From NCBI RefSeq assembly GCF_002571385.2, contig NW_019217784.1:791218-855217 (forward strand): a DNA stretch of 64,000 nt, given 5' to 3'. Position 1 is the first letter of the stretch. Each line of letters starts with the position of its first letter. This DNA is from Stylophora pistillata (Eukaryota). A model generated the notes under the pieces. It worked only from the letters and a program-made list of their open reading frames with translations. It was not told where the DNA came from and made no database searches. Of this stretch, positions 6,628 to 19,800 are shown piece by piece. Both the position numbers and the translations under genes were made by a program.

Positions 6628-6852
6628 AAAGTTGAAATGGTAAATTGGCCACCGTAATGATTACAAAAGCTGACGTTTCGAGCGTTAGCCCTTCTTCGGA
6701 TCCGACGAAGGGCTAACGCTCGAAACGTCAGCTTTTGTAATCATTACGGTGGCCAATTTACCATTTCAACTTTGTTGATATATCCAAATTATTTCGTTAC
6801 TCCCACCGACGCAGCCCCAAACAGTTTCTTTCGAAACTATCAGCCTTTATTC
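6628..6852 (+). mobile_element. Short Penelope-like (pseudo-LTR) insertion with 5' inversion forming a 146-bp palindrome; hammerhead-like cores
   Basis: 6628-6773 is self-complementary about 6700/6701 with one mismatch (6695/6706). It contains CCGACGA-AGGGCTAACGCTC-GAAA-CGTC (6702-6729). A 15-bp direct repeat ATTTGTTTAAAACCA lies at 6614-6628 and 6853-6867 (TSD). Confidence 0.75.
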
Positions 6853-8530: not shown

Positions 8531-9652
8531 ATGACAGTTAATTCAACTCATCCTACACAAAGCCCGACGGAGAGAAATGTGCGCTTGGGTTTTTTCATCG
8601 CCACGTTTGTTATTGGACTTGTTGGAAACCTTCTGGTAATCGTTATCATAACCAAGCGAGCCAAGAAAACTGTCAACGATTTTTTCATTATGAATTTAGC
8701 CGTGTCCGACCTTATGCTTATCTTCTTTCTACCGCTGCACATCTACGGCATGTTTGACACTATTCGTGTCACAGCATTTTTCTGTCATTTCATTCGCCCT
8801 CTCATGACAGCATCGTTCTTCGTCAGTGTCTACACCCTCACCTCAATGGCCATTCATCGGTGTCACGTGATCTTGCATCCTTTCAAACAGGAAATGCGTC
8901 ACAAGTCCGCTGTTTTATGGATAATAGCACTGTGGATTATGTCATTTGCAAATGTTCTTCCATTGATGATTGTCACCACACCAGACCCACCATTCGAATG
9001 TCTTGAAAACTGGCCGAGTTTGAATCACAGGCGGGCATATACAGCTGCTCTCTTTGTACTTCAGTACATCCTTCCACTGGTTATCATCGCAATAGCATAT
9101 ATCAGAATAGGTTTGGATCTTAACCGCTCGTGTTCTCGTAGTTTCAGAACTGCCAGGGCTTCCAAAAGCCTGAAGAACCAGGCAAGACGGCGAGAAAACT
9201 TTAAAGTAACTAAAACTCTGGCGATAATCGTCATGATATTTGCAGTGTGTATGCTACCCAGTCAGGTGGGTTGGATGTTGTTGGATTTTGGTGACACAAA
9301 ACAAAAAGCGATCGCCATTAAGGTGATTTTTAAATTTTCACTTGTTCTCACTGTGTTTCACAGTTGCCTGAATCCTCTTGTTTATGGAAGCATCACTAAA
9401 CAGTTTCGCCGTGGCTACGTGAAATATCTGTCGTATTTGTGTTACTGTTGTAGAAGTTCCATCTTGAGAGAAATCAAGATATTGCGCATTTCAGAAAGCT
9501 CATCCCAAAAAGGCCCTGACGACTTTAAACGTGCGCACAATGGACTTCTAGGAAATGCCGGACTCGAAGCAATATGTTCTCCAAAATCGAAACAAATTAG
9601 AGATGAATTATCTTCAAGCTATGAGACATTTGATGTTGTGACCGTACTTTAG
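8531..9652 (+). CDS. Single-exon rhodopsin-like (class A) GPCR, neuropeptide-receptor-like, 373 aa
   Basis: Seven hydrophobic segments. Motifs: TM1 GN (GLVGNLLV), TM2 NLAVSD, TM3 HRC at the DRY position, TM5 YILP, TM6 CMLP, TM7 NPLVY. ECL2 CLENW; Cys-rich tail CYCC. Confidence 0.93.
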   Translation: MTVNSTHPTQSPTERNVRLGFFIATFVIGLVGNLLVIVIITKRAKKTVNDFFIMNLAVSDLMLIFFLPLHIYGMFDTIRVTAFFCHFIRPLMTASFFVSVYTLTSMAIHRCHVILHPFKQEMRHKSAVLWIIALWIMSFANVLPLMIVTTPDPPFECLENWPSLNHRRAYTAALFVLQYILPLVIIAIAYIRIGLDLNRSCSRSFRTARASKSLKNQARRRENFKVTKTLAIIVMIFAVCMLPSQVGWMLLDFGDTKQKAIAIKVIFKFSLVLTVFHSCLNPLVYGSITKQFRRGYVKYLSYLCYCCRSSILREIKILRISESSSQKGPDDFKRAHNGLLGNAGLEAICSPKSKQIRDELSSSYETFDVVTVL

Positions 9653-13400: not shown

Positions 13401-14940
13401 GTGACAAGACAGGTTGTATCATCCTCATCTGTGGTCAACAACCTTGTGATTTCTTCACAAATATCCATCCTTCCAACAAAATTAGGAACCTTTCTGGGAA
13501 GGCCAACAGATCTTGGTCTCCGTTCATTATCCTCACAGGGCTGTTCACCTGCAAATAAAAAAAAAAAATTGTTTGTTATAACTTCAACTAAGTAATTGCA
13601 TCATTAAGTGAATAGGTATGGGGGACAGAGAGAGATAAATTTTCTTTAAAGTTTGATTCAGGGGTGATTCTGCTGGGACAAATTACAACTTAATCATTCT
13701 TGGGGTGAGGAAGGTTAAGAGAATAAGCCCCTTCCCCTTGAGAATCTCCAGATTAAGAAGGGAAATCTACTCCCCATGGAATGTTTGATTAATTGTGACA
13801 CATAAAAATGCCACTTGGTCAAACCACATCACTTTTATCAGTTACAACTGGTAACAAATACAGTCATCAACACCTGCACCAACAGAACTGCATAATTTGA
13901 ACATTTCAATGAACCTGCTACACATAGCTTCCCAAGAATATTTAGCGATAACCTTCGAATATTTTATTATCAAAGGCACTTTTTTCCACTGTAAAATATT
14001 TGCAAAGTAAGTAACCAGCAATTTCTGGGCTAGATTGCCATCAAAACTGACCCTCTGAAATTTTATTTTAAGAAAATCCCCTCTACGGTGGTGGAGGGGC
14101 ATGAACATTTTCTGGAACTAGACAGTAGAGACATCAGACCTACTGAACAGTCATACATTCAGTCACACAGCTGACCACTAGCTGCTACACAGGAAGCAAA
14201 ACATGTGCAAATTTATGGTCACGAAAAGACATGGGATGTTTGGTTTGAGATGCCACCTTCCCTTAGACAGCTGTTTGTCTCCAGTGCATCATAAGGCTGG
14301 CTATCTCAATTCACATAAAGGACCATTAGAAACATTCACCAGAAATGCTTGGAAATAAAATAACTCAGTCTGTAATTACAACTTTTCATTCATGATTTAT
14401 CAGCTGGCCGAATGCCAATCTAAACAGTACGTCTACTCTACTTGTTAGACTGCACAGATATCATCGCGTAAAAGAAAGGTATGTCGAATAAGGTAATCAA
14501 ATAGTTAAAGATTACTACACTACGTGTAAATTATTTGCGATTGTCATATAAAAAATTTAACTATGAACAGAAATAAATAGATTTTCTTACCCTCTATACG
14601 CATCTTAATTGGAAAACGTACACGAATATTTTATGCTCCCGTAGAATCAACATATCTCAATACCTGACATATGGCGATGGATCTCATTGGCCAAGAAACT
14701 ACGGCCGGAGCCATGAAGAGCAGCCAAAAACGATTCAAAGGCACCAGGACCACATCGAGAAAGCACATCCAACAGGTAAAATGCCTTTCCCTCACTAGTG
14801 GTTTCAGCCAGGATCAATTCTTTACTTGCTTCGTCAAGAATTTCGTTGGTAAAAAGTACTTCTGTTATCCTCCTTGCATCAATATTCCGCGAGATATGTA
14901 GCCGAAACTTCCTTAACACTTTCCTATGTGATTCCTCCAT
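10407..14940 (-). CDS. CARD + NB-ARC/STAND ATPase + TPR protein (~791 aa); exons 14940-14664, 13548-11887, 11310-11104, 10636-10407
   Basis: Exon 1 is a caspase-2/RAIDD-like CARD (LLDVLSRCGPGAFESFLAAL). Exon 2 has LPRKVPNFVGR, Walker A APPGFGKT (13393-13370), Walker B LILDNAED, LITSR, GIPL and LHPLV. Exons 3-4 have kinesin-light-chain-type TPRs (LLGQHPFTASLLHYLG; LLGDNHVDTARAYYGLG). All introns are GT-AG and keep the frame. Confidence 0.9.
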
Positions 14941-15046
14941 GTTCTACCTCAACAAAACAAGTTAATGTTGGGGAGAGCAAACGTTTTCAAACGGTTTATA
15001 AGACGACCTCTCAGCTCGTGATTTCACAAAAGAGTTACTTCAAGCT

Positions 15047-15213
15047 TTCTCGGAAATTCCGGAAATGATAGTAAAGCGTTTGCGTAGTGAGGCCACCGGA
15101 AACTGTATCCACCAAAAACAATGTTAATCGTTGATGGGAAAGTCCCACCTGTGAAACTTTTCACCATAATATAAGAATCATTTCAAAACAAGCATTTCCC
15201 TGGGAAAGTTTCC
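15047..15213 (-). promoter_or_regulatory. Cluster of NF-kB and STAT(GAS)/ETS-like sites upstream of the CARD-STAND-TPR gene
   Basis: GGGAAAGTCCC at 15136-15146 (canonical GGGACTTTCC on the - strand), GGGAAAGTTTCC at 15202-15213, CGGAAATTCC at 15051-15060, GAS TTCTCGGAA at 15047-15055 and TTCCGGAAA at 15057-15065. All lie within 107-273 bp of the ATG. Confidence 0.65.
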
Positions 15214-15273
15214 TCGATATGTTTACAGAGCTGTGTAATTTATATTGTAACTTCCTTTTCGGAGTGTTAACTA

Positions 15274-15680
15274 GACAAGACAAGACAATACAAGACAGGA
15301 CAAGATTTATTTGAACTGTAAAATTACCTTAGTTACAAATTAAACGAGAAATAAATTAAAAATACATGCAGTTGCTGGTCACCCAAAATAACTAAATAGC
15401 TAAACTAGTTGGGTGACCACCATATATTAATTGAAAATAAATATAAAGTCAGAAAAGAGGCATTTTCACCATTTAACATTTTAAATTCTTATTAAGGAAA
15501 TAGATTACAGAACAAATAATTCTTAAACACGTATACAATAAAAAAAGTAAATGAAATATATAACTAAATAACAGAAACACCAAAACATAACAGTTAGTAA
15601 TAAAACTTAAGACAAATTAATGAAATGCATAGATAATTCTCTTTTGAATGAATAGCGCGTTAGAATCTTCCTTTAGAGTG
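15274..15680 (-). mobile_element. LINE (L2/CR1-type) 3' end fragment
   Basis: (CTTGT)n-like simple-repeat tail preceded by AATAAA on the - strand, and a 3' stem-loop GGTCACCCAA...TTGGGTGACC. The boundary at 15680 is approximate. Confidence 0.5.
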
Positions 15681-16675
15681 TTTTGATAATACTCTGTGAG
15701 CCGCTTGCCGCAACCCGATTCGTTGGCTAATTACAATCTATTAGTGATTTCTCCACTCATCTTCCTTTGAAGATTAACCACACATAATTTCCAAGTGGAA
15801 AGATTGCCCGCAGAAGTTATTAGTTTTTTGGAGCAGTGATTTTGTACTGATTAGAAAGTCCCATTAATTAGTGATAGTAACTGTATCGGATTTCCGCTGA
15901 GCTTTGCTCCTTCCTGTAACTCAGGGACTCCTTCCTGGAGCACTTGTTGAAAACAAAGTTAAATATCAAAAAGGGAGAACCAGTTTTTTTGCATCCAAAA
16001 TTTCAATAATAAAAACACGCCTAAATCAGTACACAGGCTACACCACTGTTTGTATGATTACTAAGGCTTGTAAATGTGAAGATTTTATCCTTATTACCTT
16101 AAAAGTCCTTAAAAGCTACAGTTTCAAGATAATTACAATGTAGAACATGGTATACCTTACCAAACTCCGGCTGCGACACTCCTCGCCTAAGCAGGGGCCG
16201 TGTTTGCTCTCCTGATAAGGCTGACTGGGAATTGACTTAGACTCATGTAGCATGACGGTAAGCAGATGTTTTTCAATTTAAGAGATTGCAGATATAGTCC
16301 AACGATCAGAAGCACGAAATGACAGGCAGGCAAAGTAGACGTATAATCGCAGGCGATACGCAGTAAAACAGACTTTCGCCGAGGTAAACACCGTAAGGTC
16401 AATGAGAGAGTACCGAGTCAGTGACTCATATCGCAACGAGTTGTGGCAGTTTTACAAAGAAAACACAAAAATATTCCATGTGTCCTGAGGGTTATGGCCG
16501 AGTCGAAGCTTATAAAGATATTGTTTTCTCTTTTAACATTCCCAACTTCCAAAGGAAACTTTTGACGTGATAAAAGGCGCTCTTGACATTTTTAAACTTG
16601 AGACTGCATAGGACACAATAAAAGCATAAGTGACCAATTAATTGACGTTATTAAGTATCGTAATTGTTAGGACAG

Positions 16676-16796
16676 CCAATCAGAGGACGGCTCACGGATT
16701 CCCCATGACGACTGTTTTAGTTTACAATTTGTGCTTTATCTAATCTCGATCTAGCGTGGATGTTGGCACATAAGACATTACTTTTATCATAGTAAC
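16676..16796 (+). promoter_or_regulatory. CCAAT box and two RFX X-box-like motifs upstream of the uncharacterised gene
   Basis: CCAAT at about 16676; TTCCCCATGACGAC at 16699-16712; TTTATCATAGTAAC at 16783-16796 (near match to GTTNYYATRGNAAC). Confidence 0.35.
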
Positions 16797-16846
16797 TGCG
16801 AACAGTTTTCACCCAGCCATCTTTTAACTGCACTTTGTTTCTAAAA

Positions 16847-19800
16847 ATGCCACAGTGGGTACAGTTGCCTCCGAATTTGCTACCGGAGAAACACACGATG
16901 GGAAAGTCAATCTACACTACTGACTATTCAAGCAGGAGACCTGGTTTTCAACTTCACCTTCAAAAGGCTCGCGGATTGCAAAGCAGCAAACATCATCCAC
17001 CGGTACCAAAGGTTCGGTCTCTTAATACTTGCTTAATTGCCTAGTCAAGCCAAGTCATGTATAAGCTAGTTAACATCTAAACTTATAGGCATATAAATTC
17101 ACATGGCTGCCTTTCCTCCCGGTTTTAATTTGAAAGTATTACTGTAAAGTCACTACTATGATTTGTTTTGTACCGGTCGGATTTTAAAATGTTTTTCATC
17201 AGTTGAAATACTCATGAATGATTATAACACGAATCTATAATCCTTGTTCCTTCAGAAACCCGACAGAAAGACGATGCGAGCGCATCAGACCGGCAATTAC
17301 CTCGATTTTAAAGAAGATTTTGTGAAAGCTTTGTCCACTGTGAGCACACACAAACCATGGAATTTTCGATTAGACGTTGACGTAACAACACCCGACGACT
17401 CCAGATCGGCAGGTACTTTAATTAATTTTCAGCAATGAATAATGCTATGTCTACCATTGTCGCACATTTCATGACGCAAATTCCGATAATAAGTTCCCAA
17501 TATGTCGTCAGGAAACGCCATTGAAACAGGAAGGTCACAAAGTTTGTTTGCAAGGATTTTTCTTCGCAAGGATTTCTTCCCATAAAAATGGTTATTTATA
17601 ATTTTGTGTCCCTCTCATCTGTACTTACCTACGAAAGCATTGATTTCTACCGCACATAGTTCCTTTTGAACAATTTTTAGTTTTCCTGTAGAAGGACAAT
17701 ATAGATATTAGCCGAAAGCTTTTAATCCTTCAGACGCACCAACGTGTCAAGTCAGTCAAGGTATCCTATTGTTTATTTGAGTGGTCCAAAATGTTAAGTC
17801 AAACGAGAATCTCAAGAGGACATGAAAAACTTTGACGTTAATTTCACTTTTTGGATGTTAATTCTGAGAGACCAAGGAATTTCATCGAAAGAGTTCTGAG
17901 AGGAAAAAGTAAACACGTGCAGATTATTTGGAAGTATCTCTTTACTAGGTGTCGCTCAAAGTAAACTAAAGACACTAAAGGACTTCAACAATTGACCCGC
18001 ACAGCTGACACAGGGATTTTAGTGCACGAGAGGTGTTAGCATATCCAATGAAAAACGAAATAATAAAACGGATGAAGGCAAATTGCACTAGCCACAGTTC
18101 TGTCATTACCTTAGGGTTGTGTTTTCTTACTGTTATTTCTTGGATTTTTTCTTTATTTTTCTTGCCTAGCCACACATTCAGAAAAGGCTTTGTTACAGAA
18201 ATTTATTCAGCCAACATTAGAATTAGTGGAGGAGGCCTGGCGAGGAGAAGTGACCAGCACGAAACGGGATCGAGGTATTTGAACAATAGATAGAAAGTTA
18301 GTGTTATCCCGGTGCCGTGTGGGTACCATTCAATGAAATTATTACTTTTTAAATTTCATCGGCAGATCGACACTATACTGTGGCTGGACAGAAAGCTGAA
18401 CTACACAGTAGATCTGAAAGACGCGAGGTATGACATTAGCAGAATAGGAACTTATTCTGTTAATTAATGAGGATTGCGACAGATTTTCCATCCTATTTGT
18501 TTTGAAGTTGCGCTTTTGTCAAAAACGATTTTCATTTCTCAATTCAGTTGTGGAGGTCAAATCAAGCACGCAGTTTTCTGAAGTAAAATATGGGAACTGA
18601 GATAATCGGCGGTACAACATGAAGGAGAATCATTAAAATTTGAGCATAGTACATGACAATTTGTAGAAACGCACTGGGGTCCACTGTGGCCTGACTACTC
18701 TCTGCTACTTTCAATTAAATTACCTTATGTTTTTTTCCGTTTGGGCGAAGGCGAAGCGGCCTGTTCTGCCTGGCGTTAACAAATGGTTGCGGTCTTCAAA
18801 TGAATATGGTAATTCAATGTTTTTTTTATCTATTGTCTTCCATGATTCCCGGTCAGCGGTGATCTTCTGTTGTTTTGGGTTAAATTAGAGTTTCTTGGTT
18901 TCCTTTCAGAAAAGGCAGTTGTTCACAACTTCATGAACACATTAAACAATGCGTCCTCGAGTTCTGTACATATGAAACAGAGTGTACCTAAAGCCACGGA
19001 GAAGAAAACTACGAAACCTCAATTTACAAAGGAGTTATATTTTCAACAACGAGCAAAAAGTGCTCGGTCCCAAAGGGTAACAGAACGCCCCACACTTCCA
19101 CCACGTCCCAAATCTGTTAGATCAGTAAGGTTAGTGAATTTCTCTAGGAAAAGTGTGTATTGCTTAAGACATAAAGGTTACTGAAGCTGAGAATGACAAT
19201 TCTTAGTTCGCTGAACTTCAGAGAGTGTTGGAGGGCGGACCTCGGATAGTCGTTAAATCGGTATTGTTAAATTCGTTTTGACCACCATGTATTCTCTCTT
19301 AACCCGAAAAGCTGCTCTGAGTACGATACATGATGCATCACCACTGTAAGTCTTTCGGGGTCATGGGTGTCTGCCTGACAAACACAAATGAGAAACAAAA
19401 TATCGAACAGAAATTGAAAGGATTTGGGAAGAGTGCCAACTCTTACCATTTGTCTTCCTCCACTCATCCCTTACTGTCAGTCCAAATATGGTATTATGTC
19501 AATGGATTTGTGCACTGTGCTAAAAAATTATTATATTTTACGGCTTGTTCGTTAGGGATGAAGACAAAGTTGCCGAGATAACCCAAACTCAAGTCGTGGA
19601 ACAAGCACACCCCCATCACTTCAATCACCCGGAAGGAAAGTGTGAATTTTGTGATTATTTAAGAGTGAAGAGGTTGTTGGAGCACCTAAATAAGTAAGTT
19701 GCACGCCTTCTGTTAACAAGTAATGTATTGCAATGTATTGCAGTGAACGCGACGGGAGGCGCGATGATAAGAGATGTTTGCTACTCAATATCTCTGTCAG

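What the first reader, a model, noticed from the sequence alone, without database searches (positions are those of the whole stretch)
15047..15213. Dense NF-kB + STAT/ETS site cluster in the proximal promoter of the CARD-STAND-TPR gene
Seen: within 170 bp there is a perfect canonical kB site (GGGACTTTCC), two more kB-like sites, and a GAS site overlapping one of them, plus a palindrome GTGAAACTTTTCAC at 15151-15164. I did not notice such a cluster at the other seven gene starts. Established: anthozoans have NF-kB and STAT, and mammalian NLRP3 is NF-kB-primed. Inference: the receptor is immune-inducible, suggesting a priming-then-sensing circuit in a cnidarian.
Basis: partly seen in the sequence, partly recalled or inferred. 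Interest (0 to 1): 0.75.

Follow-up and report, generated by a model that had tools for sequence, protein, structure and literature searches.

The report
Conserved NF-kB site in coral receptor promoter
A stony-coral gene for a CARD/NB-ARC/TPR switch protein has an exact NF-kB binding motif just upstream of its start, and the same motif sits there in the matching gene of two other corals, so NF-kB control is plausible but untested.

Summary
A single kB site is at chance level in 64 kb: 3 found against 2.68 expected. The cluster is not at chance level. It is the top-scoring locus of the window, and 0 of 200 shuffles reach its score, though the motif set was chosen post hoc.

The main result is conservation. 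The exact 11-mer GGGACTTTCCC lies on the sense strand upstream of the CARD exon in 2 of 3 orthologous coral loci. It is the only 11-mer shared in this way. A conserved GTTTCCGGT (ETS core) follows it 33-44 bp downstream.

The GAS site, the GGAATTTCC site, the distal kB-like site and the palindrome are not conserved in position. Spliced transcript contigs reach 15051, 15070 and 15229. The start of transcription therefore lies inside or above the cluster, and the GAS/kB-like pair is transcribed.

Verdict: this is a real, compact promoter with a footprinted kB site and ETS site. NF-kB control is plausible. STAT input has no support, and the priming circuit and inducibility are untested. It is a new member of a known kind. 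Another note of this scan (s1-783821, unchecked) reports kB-rich promoters elsewhere in this genome.

The parts
15136..15146 (-). kB site GGGACTTTCCC, an 11-mer with two 5-bp half-sites, at -206 to -196 from the ATG
   Evidence: locate it. The exact 11-mer, in the same orientation, is in orthologous loci L033 (-237) and L032 (-175) but absent from L034. It is the only 11-mer shared with at least 2 of 3 orthologs, and 0 of 2000 shuffles give any such 11-mer.
15095..15103 (-). Conserved GTTTCCGGT (ETS-type CCGGAA core), 43 bp downstream of the start of the kB site
   Evidence: The 9-mer is shared with L033 (-193) and L032 (-142). The spacing from kB to ETS is 43, 44 and 33 bp.
15076..15085 (-). 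Conserved block ACGCAAACGC, probably at or just upstream of the main transcription start
   Evidence: It aligns in all 4 sequences as ACGCA(A/G)ACGC, with GCGCAGACGC in L032. The transcript contig of X8 ends at 15070, 6 bp beyond the block.
15047..15065 (.). GAS TTCTCGGAA, GGAAATTCC and CCGGAAA, overlapping; species-specific and transcribed
   Evidence: locate them. They are covered by spliced transcript contigs of X1 and X8, and partly by that of X3. They are not conserved in position.
15151..15164 (.). Inverted repeat GTGAAA-ct-TTTCAC next to the kB site
   Evidence: One search shows it. The 10-mer GTGAAAAGTT recurs in L033 and L032, but at -28 in the 5'UTR rather than at the matching place.
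15195..15213 (.). Distal TTTCCCTGGGAAAGTTTCC (off-consensus kB-like site, 12-bp spacing)
   Evidence: it matches none of the three 10-mer kB patterns. It is not conserved in alignment A2.
14995..15000 (-). TATAAA at -60, inside the transcript
   Evidence: locate it. A TATA-like block aligns in all 4 sequences. It is covered by the transcript contigs of 4 of 4 runs. A similar, shifted stretch also seems to lie in the 5'UTR of the spliced contig L038; this is my reading of the printed sequence, not an alignment. The X5 allele carries T>G at 14997.
14664..14940 (-). Coding part of exon 1 (CARD domain), with the ATG at 14940
   Evidence: Pfam CARD, E = 2.4e-9. The exon 1-exon 2 joint, intron 13549-14663, is seen in 4 of 4 runs.
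15267..15669 (.). Dispersed repeat of about 400 bp that bounds the unique promoter DNA upstream
   Evidence: 38 other matches at 79-95% identity. 27 other matches, mostly at 84-93% identity.

Best explanation
The region is the compact, TATA-independent proximal promoter and first part of the 5'UTR of the single-copy Stylophora pistillata gene LOC111319657 (CARD, NB-ARC, TPR).

Two elements are under purifying selection across stony corals. One is an 11-bp p50-type kB site, GGGACTTTCCC. The other is an ETS-core 9-mer, GTTTCCGGT, lying 33-44 bp downstream of it and followed by a conserved block where transcription most likely starts.

The proposed mechanism is inferred, not shown. An ETS-family factor sets basal transcription. 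The coral's single p100/p105-like NF-kB, once activated, binds the kB site some 40-70 bp upstream of the start and raises transcription of the receptor.

The other GGAA/TTCC-core motifs (the GAS site, GGAATTTCC and the distal site) are lineage-specific. They are either weak auxiliary sites or chance matches.
For: - The motifs are present, and the cluster is the top locus of the window, with 0 of 200 shuffles equal to it.
- The DNA from 14941 to about 15266 is unique in the genome.
- The gene is single-copy; the nearest paralog is 33% identical.
- Its identity is confirmed at 100% to LOC111319657.
- The exact kB 11-mer and the ETS 9-mer are conserved in 2 of 3 orthologous loci whose exon 2 is only 62-63% identical in protein, while the flanks have diverged.
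- The kB-to-ETS spacing is 43, 44 and 33 bp, so it differs by about one helical turn.
- Among 71 fetched loci the 10-mer occurs only in the window's own locus (fetched twice), in the two orthologous promoters and at one unrelated place.
- The 11-mer occurs 187 times in the genome against 97 for the reversed control. It forms homotypic arrays elsewhere. It also sits upstream of three tandem STAND-TPR paralogs.
- The genome has one RHD locus.
- Spliced contigs end at 15051, 15070 and 15229.
- In passages I read, sea-anemone NF-kB has a binding profile like human p50 (PMC5700166). A Nematostella CARD+NB-ARC gene rises modestly, LFC 1.12, after poly(I:C) (PMC11251625).
Against: - There are no expression or binding data for this gene.
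- One of the three orthologous loci (L034) lacks both conserved elements.
- Contigs cannot fix a transcription start. In run X1 the contig reaches 15229, which would put the kB site inside the 5'UTR.
- The sense strand has no ATG from -226 down to the start codon; only 1% of shuffles give a run that long. This also allows a start upstream of the kB site.
- In Nematostella, 16 of 200 random genes carry a predicted kB site within 500 bp of the start (PMC10329013, passage), so such sites are common.
- The binding score of this exact site for a cnidarian NF-kB is in a supplement that I could not open.
Confidence: 0.55

Rival explanations
1. The conserved 11-mer is a working cis-element but is bound by a factor other than NF-kB. 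The gene would then be expressed constitutively rather than induced by immune signals.
For: Conservation shows constraint but does not name the factor. The gene is present in RNA contigs from 4 of 4 runs of four different studies, with no challenge known to me.
Against: The 11-mer is a perfect match to the kB consensus. Elsewhere in this genome it forms tandem arrays 19-20 bp apart together with other kB-type variants. Only the 11-mer itself is shared among the orthologs, not flanks that would make a different composite site.
Confidence: 0.17
2. This is a GGAA-rich, ETS-driven housekeeping-type promoter. The kB-like and GAS matches arise because they share GGAA/TTCC cores, and the whole cluster reflects ETS-family binding.
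For: There are 8 GGAA/TTCC cores in 167 bp against a mean of 1.47. Every kB-like or GAS motif here contains such a core. The conserved 9-mer has an ETS core. L033 also has 6 cores in the matching interval.
Against: The best-conserved element is the full 11-mer including GGGAC, which goes well beyond an ETS core. 7.5% of shuffles reach the same core density somewhere in the window, so density alone is weak evidence either way.
Confidence: 0.13
3. Transcription starts upstream of the whole cluster, at or beyond 15229. The motifs would then lie in the 5'UTR and act, if at all, as downstream or RNA-level elements.
For: The X1 contig runs to 15229 and then into adapter letters. The sense strand has no ATG from -226 down to the start codon.
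Against: The contigs of three other runs stop at 15033-15070. In L033 and L032, ATGs lie between the kB and ETS sites, which argues that transcription starts downstream of them. A de Bruijn contig can be extended by rare reads.
Confidence: 0.1
4. The cluster is a chance cluster of short motif matches and has no regulatory role.
For: Single motifs are at chance frequency. The motif set was chosen post hoc.
Against: 0 of 200 shuffles reach the cluster score. The exact 11-mer and 9-mer are conserved in orthologs, with 0 of 2000 and 3 of 2000 shuffles respectively giving any k-mer shared in that way.
Confidence: 0.05

Closest known systems
Predicted and validated NF-kB target promoters in sea anemones, such as Nematostella TRAF3 (PMC10329013, passages read)
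   Same: There are kB sites within a few hundred bp of the start of an immune or cell-death signalling gene. The organism has a single p50-like NF-kB.
   Different: The TRAF3 sites were shown to bind Nv-NF-kB in EMSA and to be needed in a reporter. Here there is no binding or reporter test, but there is cross-species conservation of the site. The passages I read did not mention such conservation for TRAF3.
Transcriptional priming of mammalian NLRP3 by NF-kB
   Same: A STAND-family receptor gene carries a kB site in its promoter. The idea is the same: a first signal raises the level of the receptor.
   Different: The coral protein has CARD, NB-ARC and TPR domains rather than PYD, NACHT and LRR. 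It resembles Apaf-1 as much as an NLR. Neither induction nor sensing has been shown.
Coral and anemone gene modules enriched for NF-kB motifs upstream of the start (10.1101/2021.12.10.472165, passages; Cleves et al. 2020 as cited in the review PMC13042239)
   Same: The kind of inference is the same, from kB motifs in proximal promoters.
   Different: Those are statistical enrichments over gene sets. This is one gene with a footprinted site.
Expanded NACHT/NB-ARC repertoire of corals with CARD and TPR combinations (PMC4083563, passages, citing Hamada et al. 2013)
   Same: The gene architecture belongs to this catalogued repertoire.
   Different: The passages I read do not treat the cis-regulation of these genes.

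Membership tests
NF-kB-responsive promoter element (kB site) | Match to the kB consensus GGGRNWYYCC | tested here: met
   GGGACTTTCC at 15137-15146 on the minus strand.
NF-kB-responsive promoter element (kB site) | A Rel-homology factor is encoded in the genome | tested here: met
   PF00554 matches one locus on C125, in two exon pieces with E = 1.8e-29 and 3.1e-10.
NF-kB-responsive promoter element (kB site) | The site lies in the proximal promoter, upstream of the transcription start | tested here: inconclusive
   Spliced contigs end at 15033, 15051 and 15070 in three runs, which puts the site 66-113 bp upstream. In X1 the contig runs to 15229, which puts the site inside the transcript. Contigs cannot fix a start.
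NF-kB-responsive promoter element (kB site) | The site is conserved in orthologous promoters | tested here: met
   The exact 11-mer, in the same orientation, is in 2 of 3 orthologous loci with upstream DNA. L034 lacks it.
NF-kB-responsive promoter element (kB site) | The organism's NF-kB binds the site, and expression depends on it | not testable with these tools
   This needs EMSA, ChIP, a reporter or a knock-down.
STAT-responsive GAS element | TTCNNNGAA motif present above chance | tested here: not met
   It is present at 15047-15055, but the window holds 23 against 28.03 expected.
STAT-responsive GAS element | The site is conserved in orthologous promoters | tested here: not met
   There is no GAS in L032 or L034. 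L033 has GAS motifs at other places, -149 and -267.
STAT-responsive GAS element | A STAT factor is encoded in the genome | tested here: inconclusive
   PF02864 and PF01017 gave no exon-wise match. The tool warns that this does not show absence.
ETS-site core promoter | A conserved CCGGAA core close to the transcription start | tested here: met
   GTTTCCGGT at 15095-15103 is shared with L033 and L032. Contig ends lie 25-62 bp downstream of it in three runs.
NLRP3-type priming circuit | A first immune signal induces the receptor mRNA through NF-kB, and the receptor then senses a second signal | not testable with these tools
   All runs were held as contigs. No paper text holds the gene's LOC number. 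Supplements were not searched.

The most novel reading that the evidence does not exclude
Stony corals keep an old feed-forward link in which NF-kB raises transcription of STAND-TPR death or immunity switches. The link would cover this CARD/NB-ARC/TPR gene and, through the same 11-mer, other STAND-TPR genes such as the tandem trio on contig C5. That would be a cnidarian counterpart of NLRP3 priming, and it would place receptor priming before the split between cnidarians and bilaterians.
Probability: 0.3. Interest if true: 0.7.

Novelty: new member of a known kind. Interest (0 to 1): 0.45.

Why it matters
Cnidarian NF-kB has few confirmed direct targets; the 2026 review calls for ChIP and knock-down work to define them (PMC13042239, passages read). 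[quoted passage not shown] A single-copy receptor gene with a short unique promoter gives a small construct that can be tested directly. That promoter holds a kB site and an ETS site, both footprinted across coral species. A reporter of about 330 bp, with or without the 11-mer, would show whether coral NF-kB controls an Apaf-1/NLR-like switch. That question bears on coral immunity, symbiosis and bleaching.

Tried and rejected
- Close paralogs for promoter comparison: none exist. The best paralog is 33% identical in both the NB-ARC exon and the CARD exon.
The closest named ortholog could therefore not be examined.
- The metagenome scan gave 11 orthologous loci, L031-L041. Only 3 of them (L032, L033, L034) hold the CARD exon with upstream DNA. 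A fourth, L038, is a spliced, transcript-like contig with 100 nt of 5'UTR. The other 7 were left out of the promoter comparison because they lack exon 1.
- A TATA-box reading was rejected. It placed TATAAA at -60 and the start near -30, but all four runs' spliced contigs cover that box.
- The 25 unlike letters at the end of the X5 contig were rejected as a candidate upstream exon. They match window 6767-6791 on the opposite strand, and there is no splice signal at 15033. This is an assembly chimera.
- STAT domain searches found nothing, which is inconclusive.
- A literature search for the exact 10-mer together with cnidarian terms was swamped by the other terms and gave nothing usable.
- The gene's LOC numbers occur in no searchable main text.
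- Supplements, such as the binding-array scores of PMC5700166 and expression tables, are closed. They may hold this site's score or this gene's response.
- No PWM library was at hand, so IUPAC patterns were used. The patterns HGGARNYYCC, GGRRNNYYCC and CCGGAAR are recalled consensus forms and do not come from any call.

Full report
**What is there.** The window is G000:C1:791218-855217 of a 397.6-Mb genome. The gene downstream of the finding lies on the minus strand. Its first coding exon (ATG at 14940, donor after 14664) encodes a CARD domain (PF00619, E = 2.4e-9). The next exon encodes an NB-ARC/NACHT-type NTPase, and a later one encodes TPR repeats. A word search returns a 791-aa protein, LOC111319657 of Stylophora pistillata, that is 100% identical to the exon 2 frame. 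An 87% identical protein from Pocillopora verrucosa also comes back. The gene is single-copy, with the nearest paralogs 33% identical.

**The observation.**
- GGGACTTTCC is on the gene's sense strand at 15137-15146, or 15136-15146 as the 11-mer GGGACTTTCCC.
- The GAS site TTCTCGGAA is at 15047-15055 and overlaps GGAAATTCC at 15052-15060.
- Two CCGGAAA sites lie at 15059-15065 and 15096-15102.
- The inverted repeat GTGAAA-ct-TTTCAC is at 15151-15164.
- TTTCCCTGGGAAAGTTTCC is at 15195-15213.

One fits only the RelA/c-Rel-type pattern HGGARNYYCC, a consensus I recalled. The distal one fits none of the three 10-mer patterns used.

**Chance.** Taken singly, the motifs are at chance level. The strict kB pattern occurs 3 times in 64 kb against 2.68 expected, and GAS occurs 23 times against 28.03. 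As a cluster the region stands out. In 167-bp sliding windows the combined count of kB-type, GAS and CCGGAAR sites is 5. No other locus in the window reaches 4, and 0 of 200 dinucleotide shuffles of the whole window reach 5. GGAA/TTCC cores number 8 against a mean of 1.47, and 7.5% of shuffles reach 8 somewhere. The motif set was chosen after seeing the region, so this test is generous to the finding.

**Surroundings.** The DNA from 14941 to about 15266 is unique in the genome. From 15267 to 15669 lies a dispersed repeat of about 400 bp. It has 38 other matches at 79-95% identity, and 27 other matches, mostly at 84-93%. Beyond it the DNA is unique again. The candidate promoter is thus at most 326 bp of unique sequence between a mobile-element copy and the ATG.

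**Transcripts.** I laid contigs from four runs of four different studies; two are on record as polyA RNA-seq.
- All four show the exon 1-exon 2 joint (intron 13549-14663, GT..AG on the minus strand).
- The middle of the intron, 14373-14569, has depth 0 in all four, so DNA carry-over is low.
- The spliced contigs reach, towards the gene's 5' end, to 15229 (X1, followed by Illumina adapter letters), 15070 (X8), 15051 (X3) and 15033 (X5).
- X5's contig continues with 25 unlike letters. These match window 6767-6791 on the other strand, and there is no splice signal at 15033, so this is an assembly chimera.

Contigs cannot fix a start, but they give lower bounds.
- The TATAAA at 14995-15000 lies inside the transcript in 4 of 4 runs.
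- The GAS/GGAAATTCC pair is transcribed in X1 and X8, and in part in X3.
- The start lies at or above 15070 in two runs and at or above 15229 in one.

The start lies within or just above the cluster.

**Orthologs.** One scan of metagenome contigs with an alignment of exon 2 homologs returned 11 orthologous loci at 59-63% protein identity. Three of them hold the CARD exon with upstream DNA: L033, L032 and L034. A fourth, L038, is a spliced, transcript-like contig with 100 nt of 5'UTR. The three loci are 82-86% identical to one another in exon 2 protein, so they are distinct genes. L033 and L034 come from the same metagenome and may be paralogs.

In the 330 bp upstream of the ATG:
- The exact 11-mer GGGACTTTCCC is on the sense strand in S. 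pistillata (-206), L033 (-237) and L032 (-175). It is absent from L034.
- In an unbiased comparison of all k-mers, it is the only 11-mer shared with at least 2 of 3 orthologs. 0 of 2000 shuffles give any such 11-mer.
- The next footprint is GTTTCCGGT, at -163, -193 and -142. That puts it 43, 44 and 33 bp after the start of the kB site, a difference of about one helical turn.
- A block ACGCA(A/G)ACGC then follows. It aligns in all four sequences, with GCGCAGACGC in L032.
- Among the 71 loci fetched up to that point, the 10-mer occurs only in the window's own locus (fetched twice), in these two promoters and at one unrelated place.

By contrast, the GAS site, the GGAATTTCC site, the distal kB-like site and the inverted repeat have no counterpart in position. 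L033 has GAS motifs elsewhere. The 10-mer GTGAAAAGTT recurs at -28 in L033 and L032 rather than next to the kB site.

**Trans factors and genome-wide use.**
- The genome has one Rel-homology locus.
- STAT domains were not found by exon-wise search, which the tool itself calls inconclusive.
- The 11-mer occurs 187 times in the genome against 97 for the reversed-pattern control.
- Some copies form tandem arrays 19-20 bp apart together with other kB-type variants.
- Four tandem copies on contig C58 lie next to TMEM121-family frames. Three of the four are followed by a GAS motif and the fourth by a near-GAS with a 2-bp spacer.
- Three tandem copies on contig C5 each lie about 0.6-1 kb upstream, on the sense strand, of a paralog with an open frame followed by a STAND NTPase frame. 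Coiled-coil-type hits were found in two of the three, and TPR in one.
- Another note of this scan (s1-783821, not checked here) reports kB-rich shared promoters elsewhere in this genome.

These points support the view that this 11-mer is a working transcription-factor site in this coral.

**Mechanism.**
*Shown:* a unique proximal region of 326 bp; two footprinted elements, kB and ETS-core; transcript 5' ends within the region; and one RHD gene.
*Taken from passages read:* anemone NF-kB binds DNA like human p50 (PMC5700166). A validated Nematostella target, TRAF3, has kB sites near its start (PMC10329013). A Nematostella CARD+NB-ARC gene rises modestly after poly(I:C) (PMC11251625).
*Inferred:* an ETS-family factor drives basal, TATA-independent transcription that starts near the conserved block at about 15070-15110. 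Activated NF-kB bound 40-70 bp upstream raises it.

I put this at 0.55. The rivals are:
- another factor binds the 11-mer (0.17);
- a GGAA-rich ETS promoter with no NF-kB input (0.13);
- a start upstream of the whole cluster (0.10), favoured by the X1 contig and by the lack of sense-strand ATGs from -226 down to the start codon;
- pure chance (0.05).

**Against the reading.**
- One of three orthologs lacks both elements.
- The orthologs are unnamed, and two may come from one species.
- No expression level, binding or induction datum exists for this gene.
- In Nematostella, 16 of 200 random genes carry a predicted kB site within 500 bp of the start (PMC10329013), so a kB site alone is common.
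- The binding score of this exact site is in a closed supplement.

**Comparison and novelty.** Predicting NF-kB targets from promoter motifs is established practice in cnidarians (PMC10329013; PMC13042239; 10.1101/2021.12.10.472165; passages read in each). The CARD/NB-ARC/TPR design is catalogued in corals (PMC4083563, passages). The LOC numbers of this gene and of its Pocillopora ortholog occur in no searchable main text; supplements were not searched. This is therefore a new member of a known kind: a specific, footprinted kB site at a coral STAND receptor gene. Interest is 0.45.

Noticed in passing
window 15267-15669: A dispersed repeat of about 400 bp (38 other matches at 79-95% identity; 27) is inserted 327 bp upstream of the ATG and bounds the unique promoter DNA. 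RNA contigs from other copies lie on 15290/15306-15347.
   Followed up: partly
window 15563-16720: Unspliced RNA contigs at low depth lie in the unique spacer between the two divergent genes (X1 9.75, X3 9.67, X8 about 4). They carry allele-like indels, 13 letters put in at 15833 and 30 left out at 16227. Strand and function are unknown.
   Followed up: no
window 16745-18500: The neighbouring gene is on the plus strand. Its exons are about 16745-17009, 17254-17410 and 18168-18272, continuing from 18364, with GT..AG on the plus strand. It lies head-to-head with the CARD gene, and the two starts are about 1.5 kb apart. Its identity was not determined.
   Followed up: no
window 14997: The allele in run X5 has T>G inside the TATAAA at 14995-15000. 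This fits a box that is not needed as a TATA element.
   Followed up: no
window 6767-6791 and 15033: The X5 contig joins the CARD transcript at 15033 to the opposite strand of 6767-6791. There is no splice signal, so this is most likely an assembly chimera.
   Followed up: yes
L079 4400-4480 (G000:C93:500400-500480) and L080 4886-4915 (G000:C180:499885-499914): These are homotypic arrays of kB sites. L079 has three to four kB-type sites 20 bp apart, and L080 has two exact 11-mers 19 bp apart. The downstream open frames have no Pfam match.
   Followed up: partly
L074 4330, L075 4756, L076 2356 (G000:C5:1778329, 1790755, 1798355): Three tandem paralogs each carry the exact kB 11-mer, on the sense strand, about 0.6-1 kb upstream of an open frame that is followed by a STAND NTPase frame. 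Coiled-coil-type hits were found in two of the three, and TPR in one. The flanks are homologous, so this counts as one inherited event.
   Followed up: partly
L077 2759 and 5604; L078 2098 and 6283 (G000:C58:598758-612282): Four tandem copies of the kB 11-mer lie next to CECR6/TMEM121-family open frames. Three are followed about 20-30 bp downstream by a GAS motif (TTCTTAGAA or TTCCTAGAA), and the fourth by a near-GAS with a 2-bp spacer.
   Followed up: partly
L038 1-400: This metagenome contig joins the CARD and NB-ARC exons without an intron, so it is transcript-like. It has 100 nt of 5'UTR and no upstream ATG. L040, from the same species at 99% identity, is genomic.
   Followed up: partly
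window 8531-9652: An intronless rhodopsin-family GPCR open frame lies on the plus strand (PF00001, E = 6e-46).
   Followed up: no
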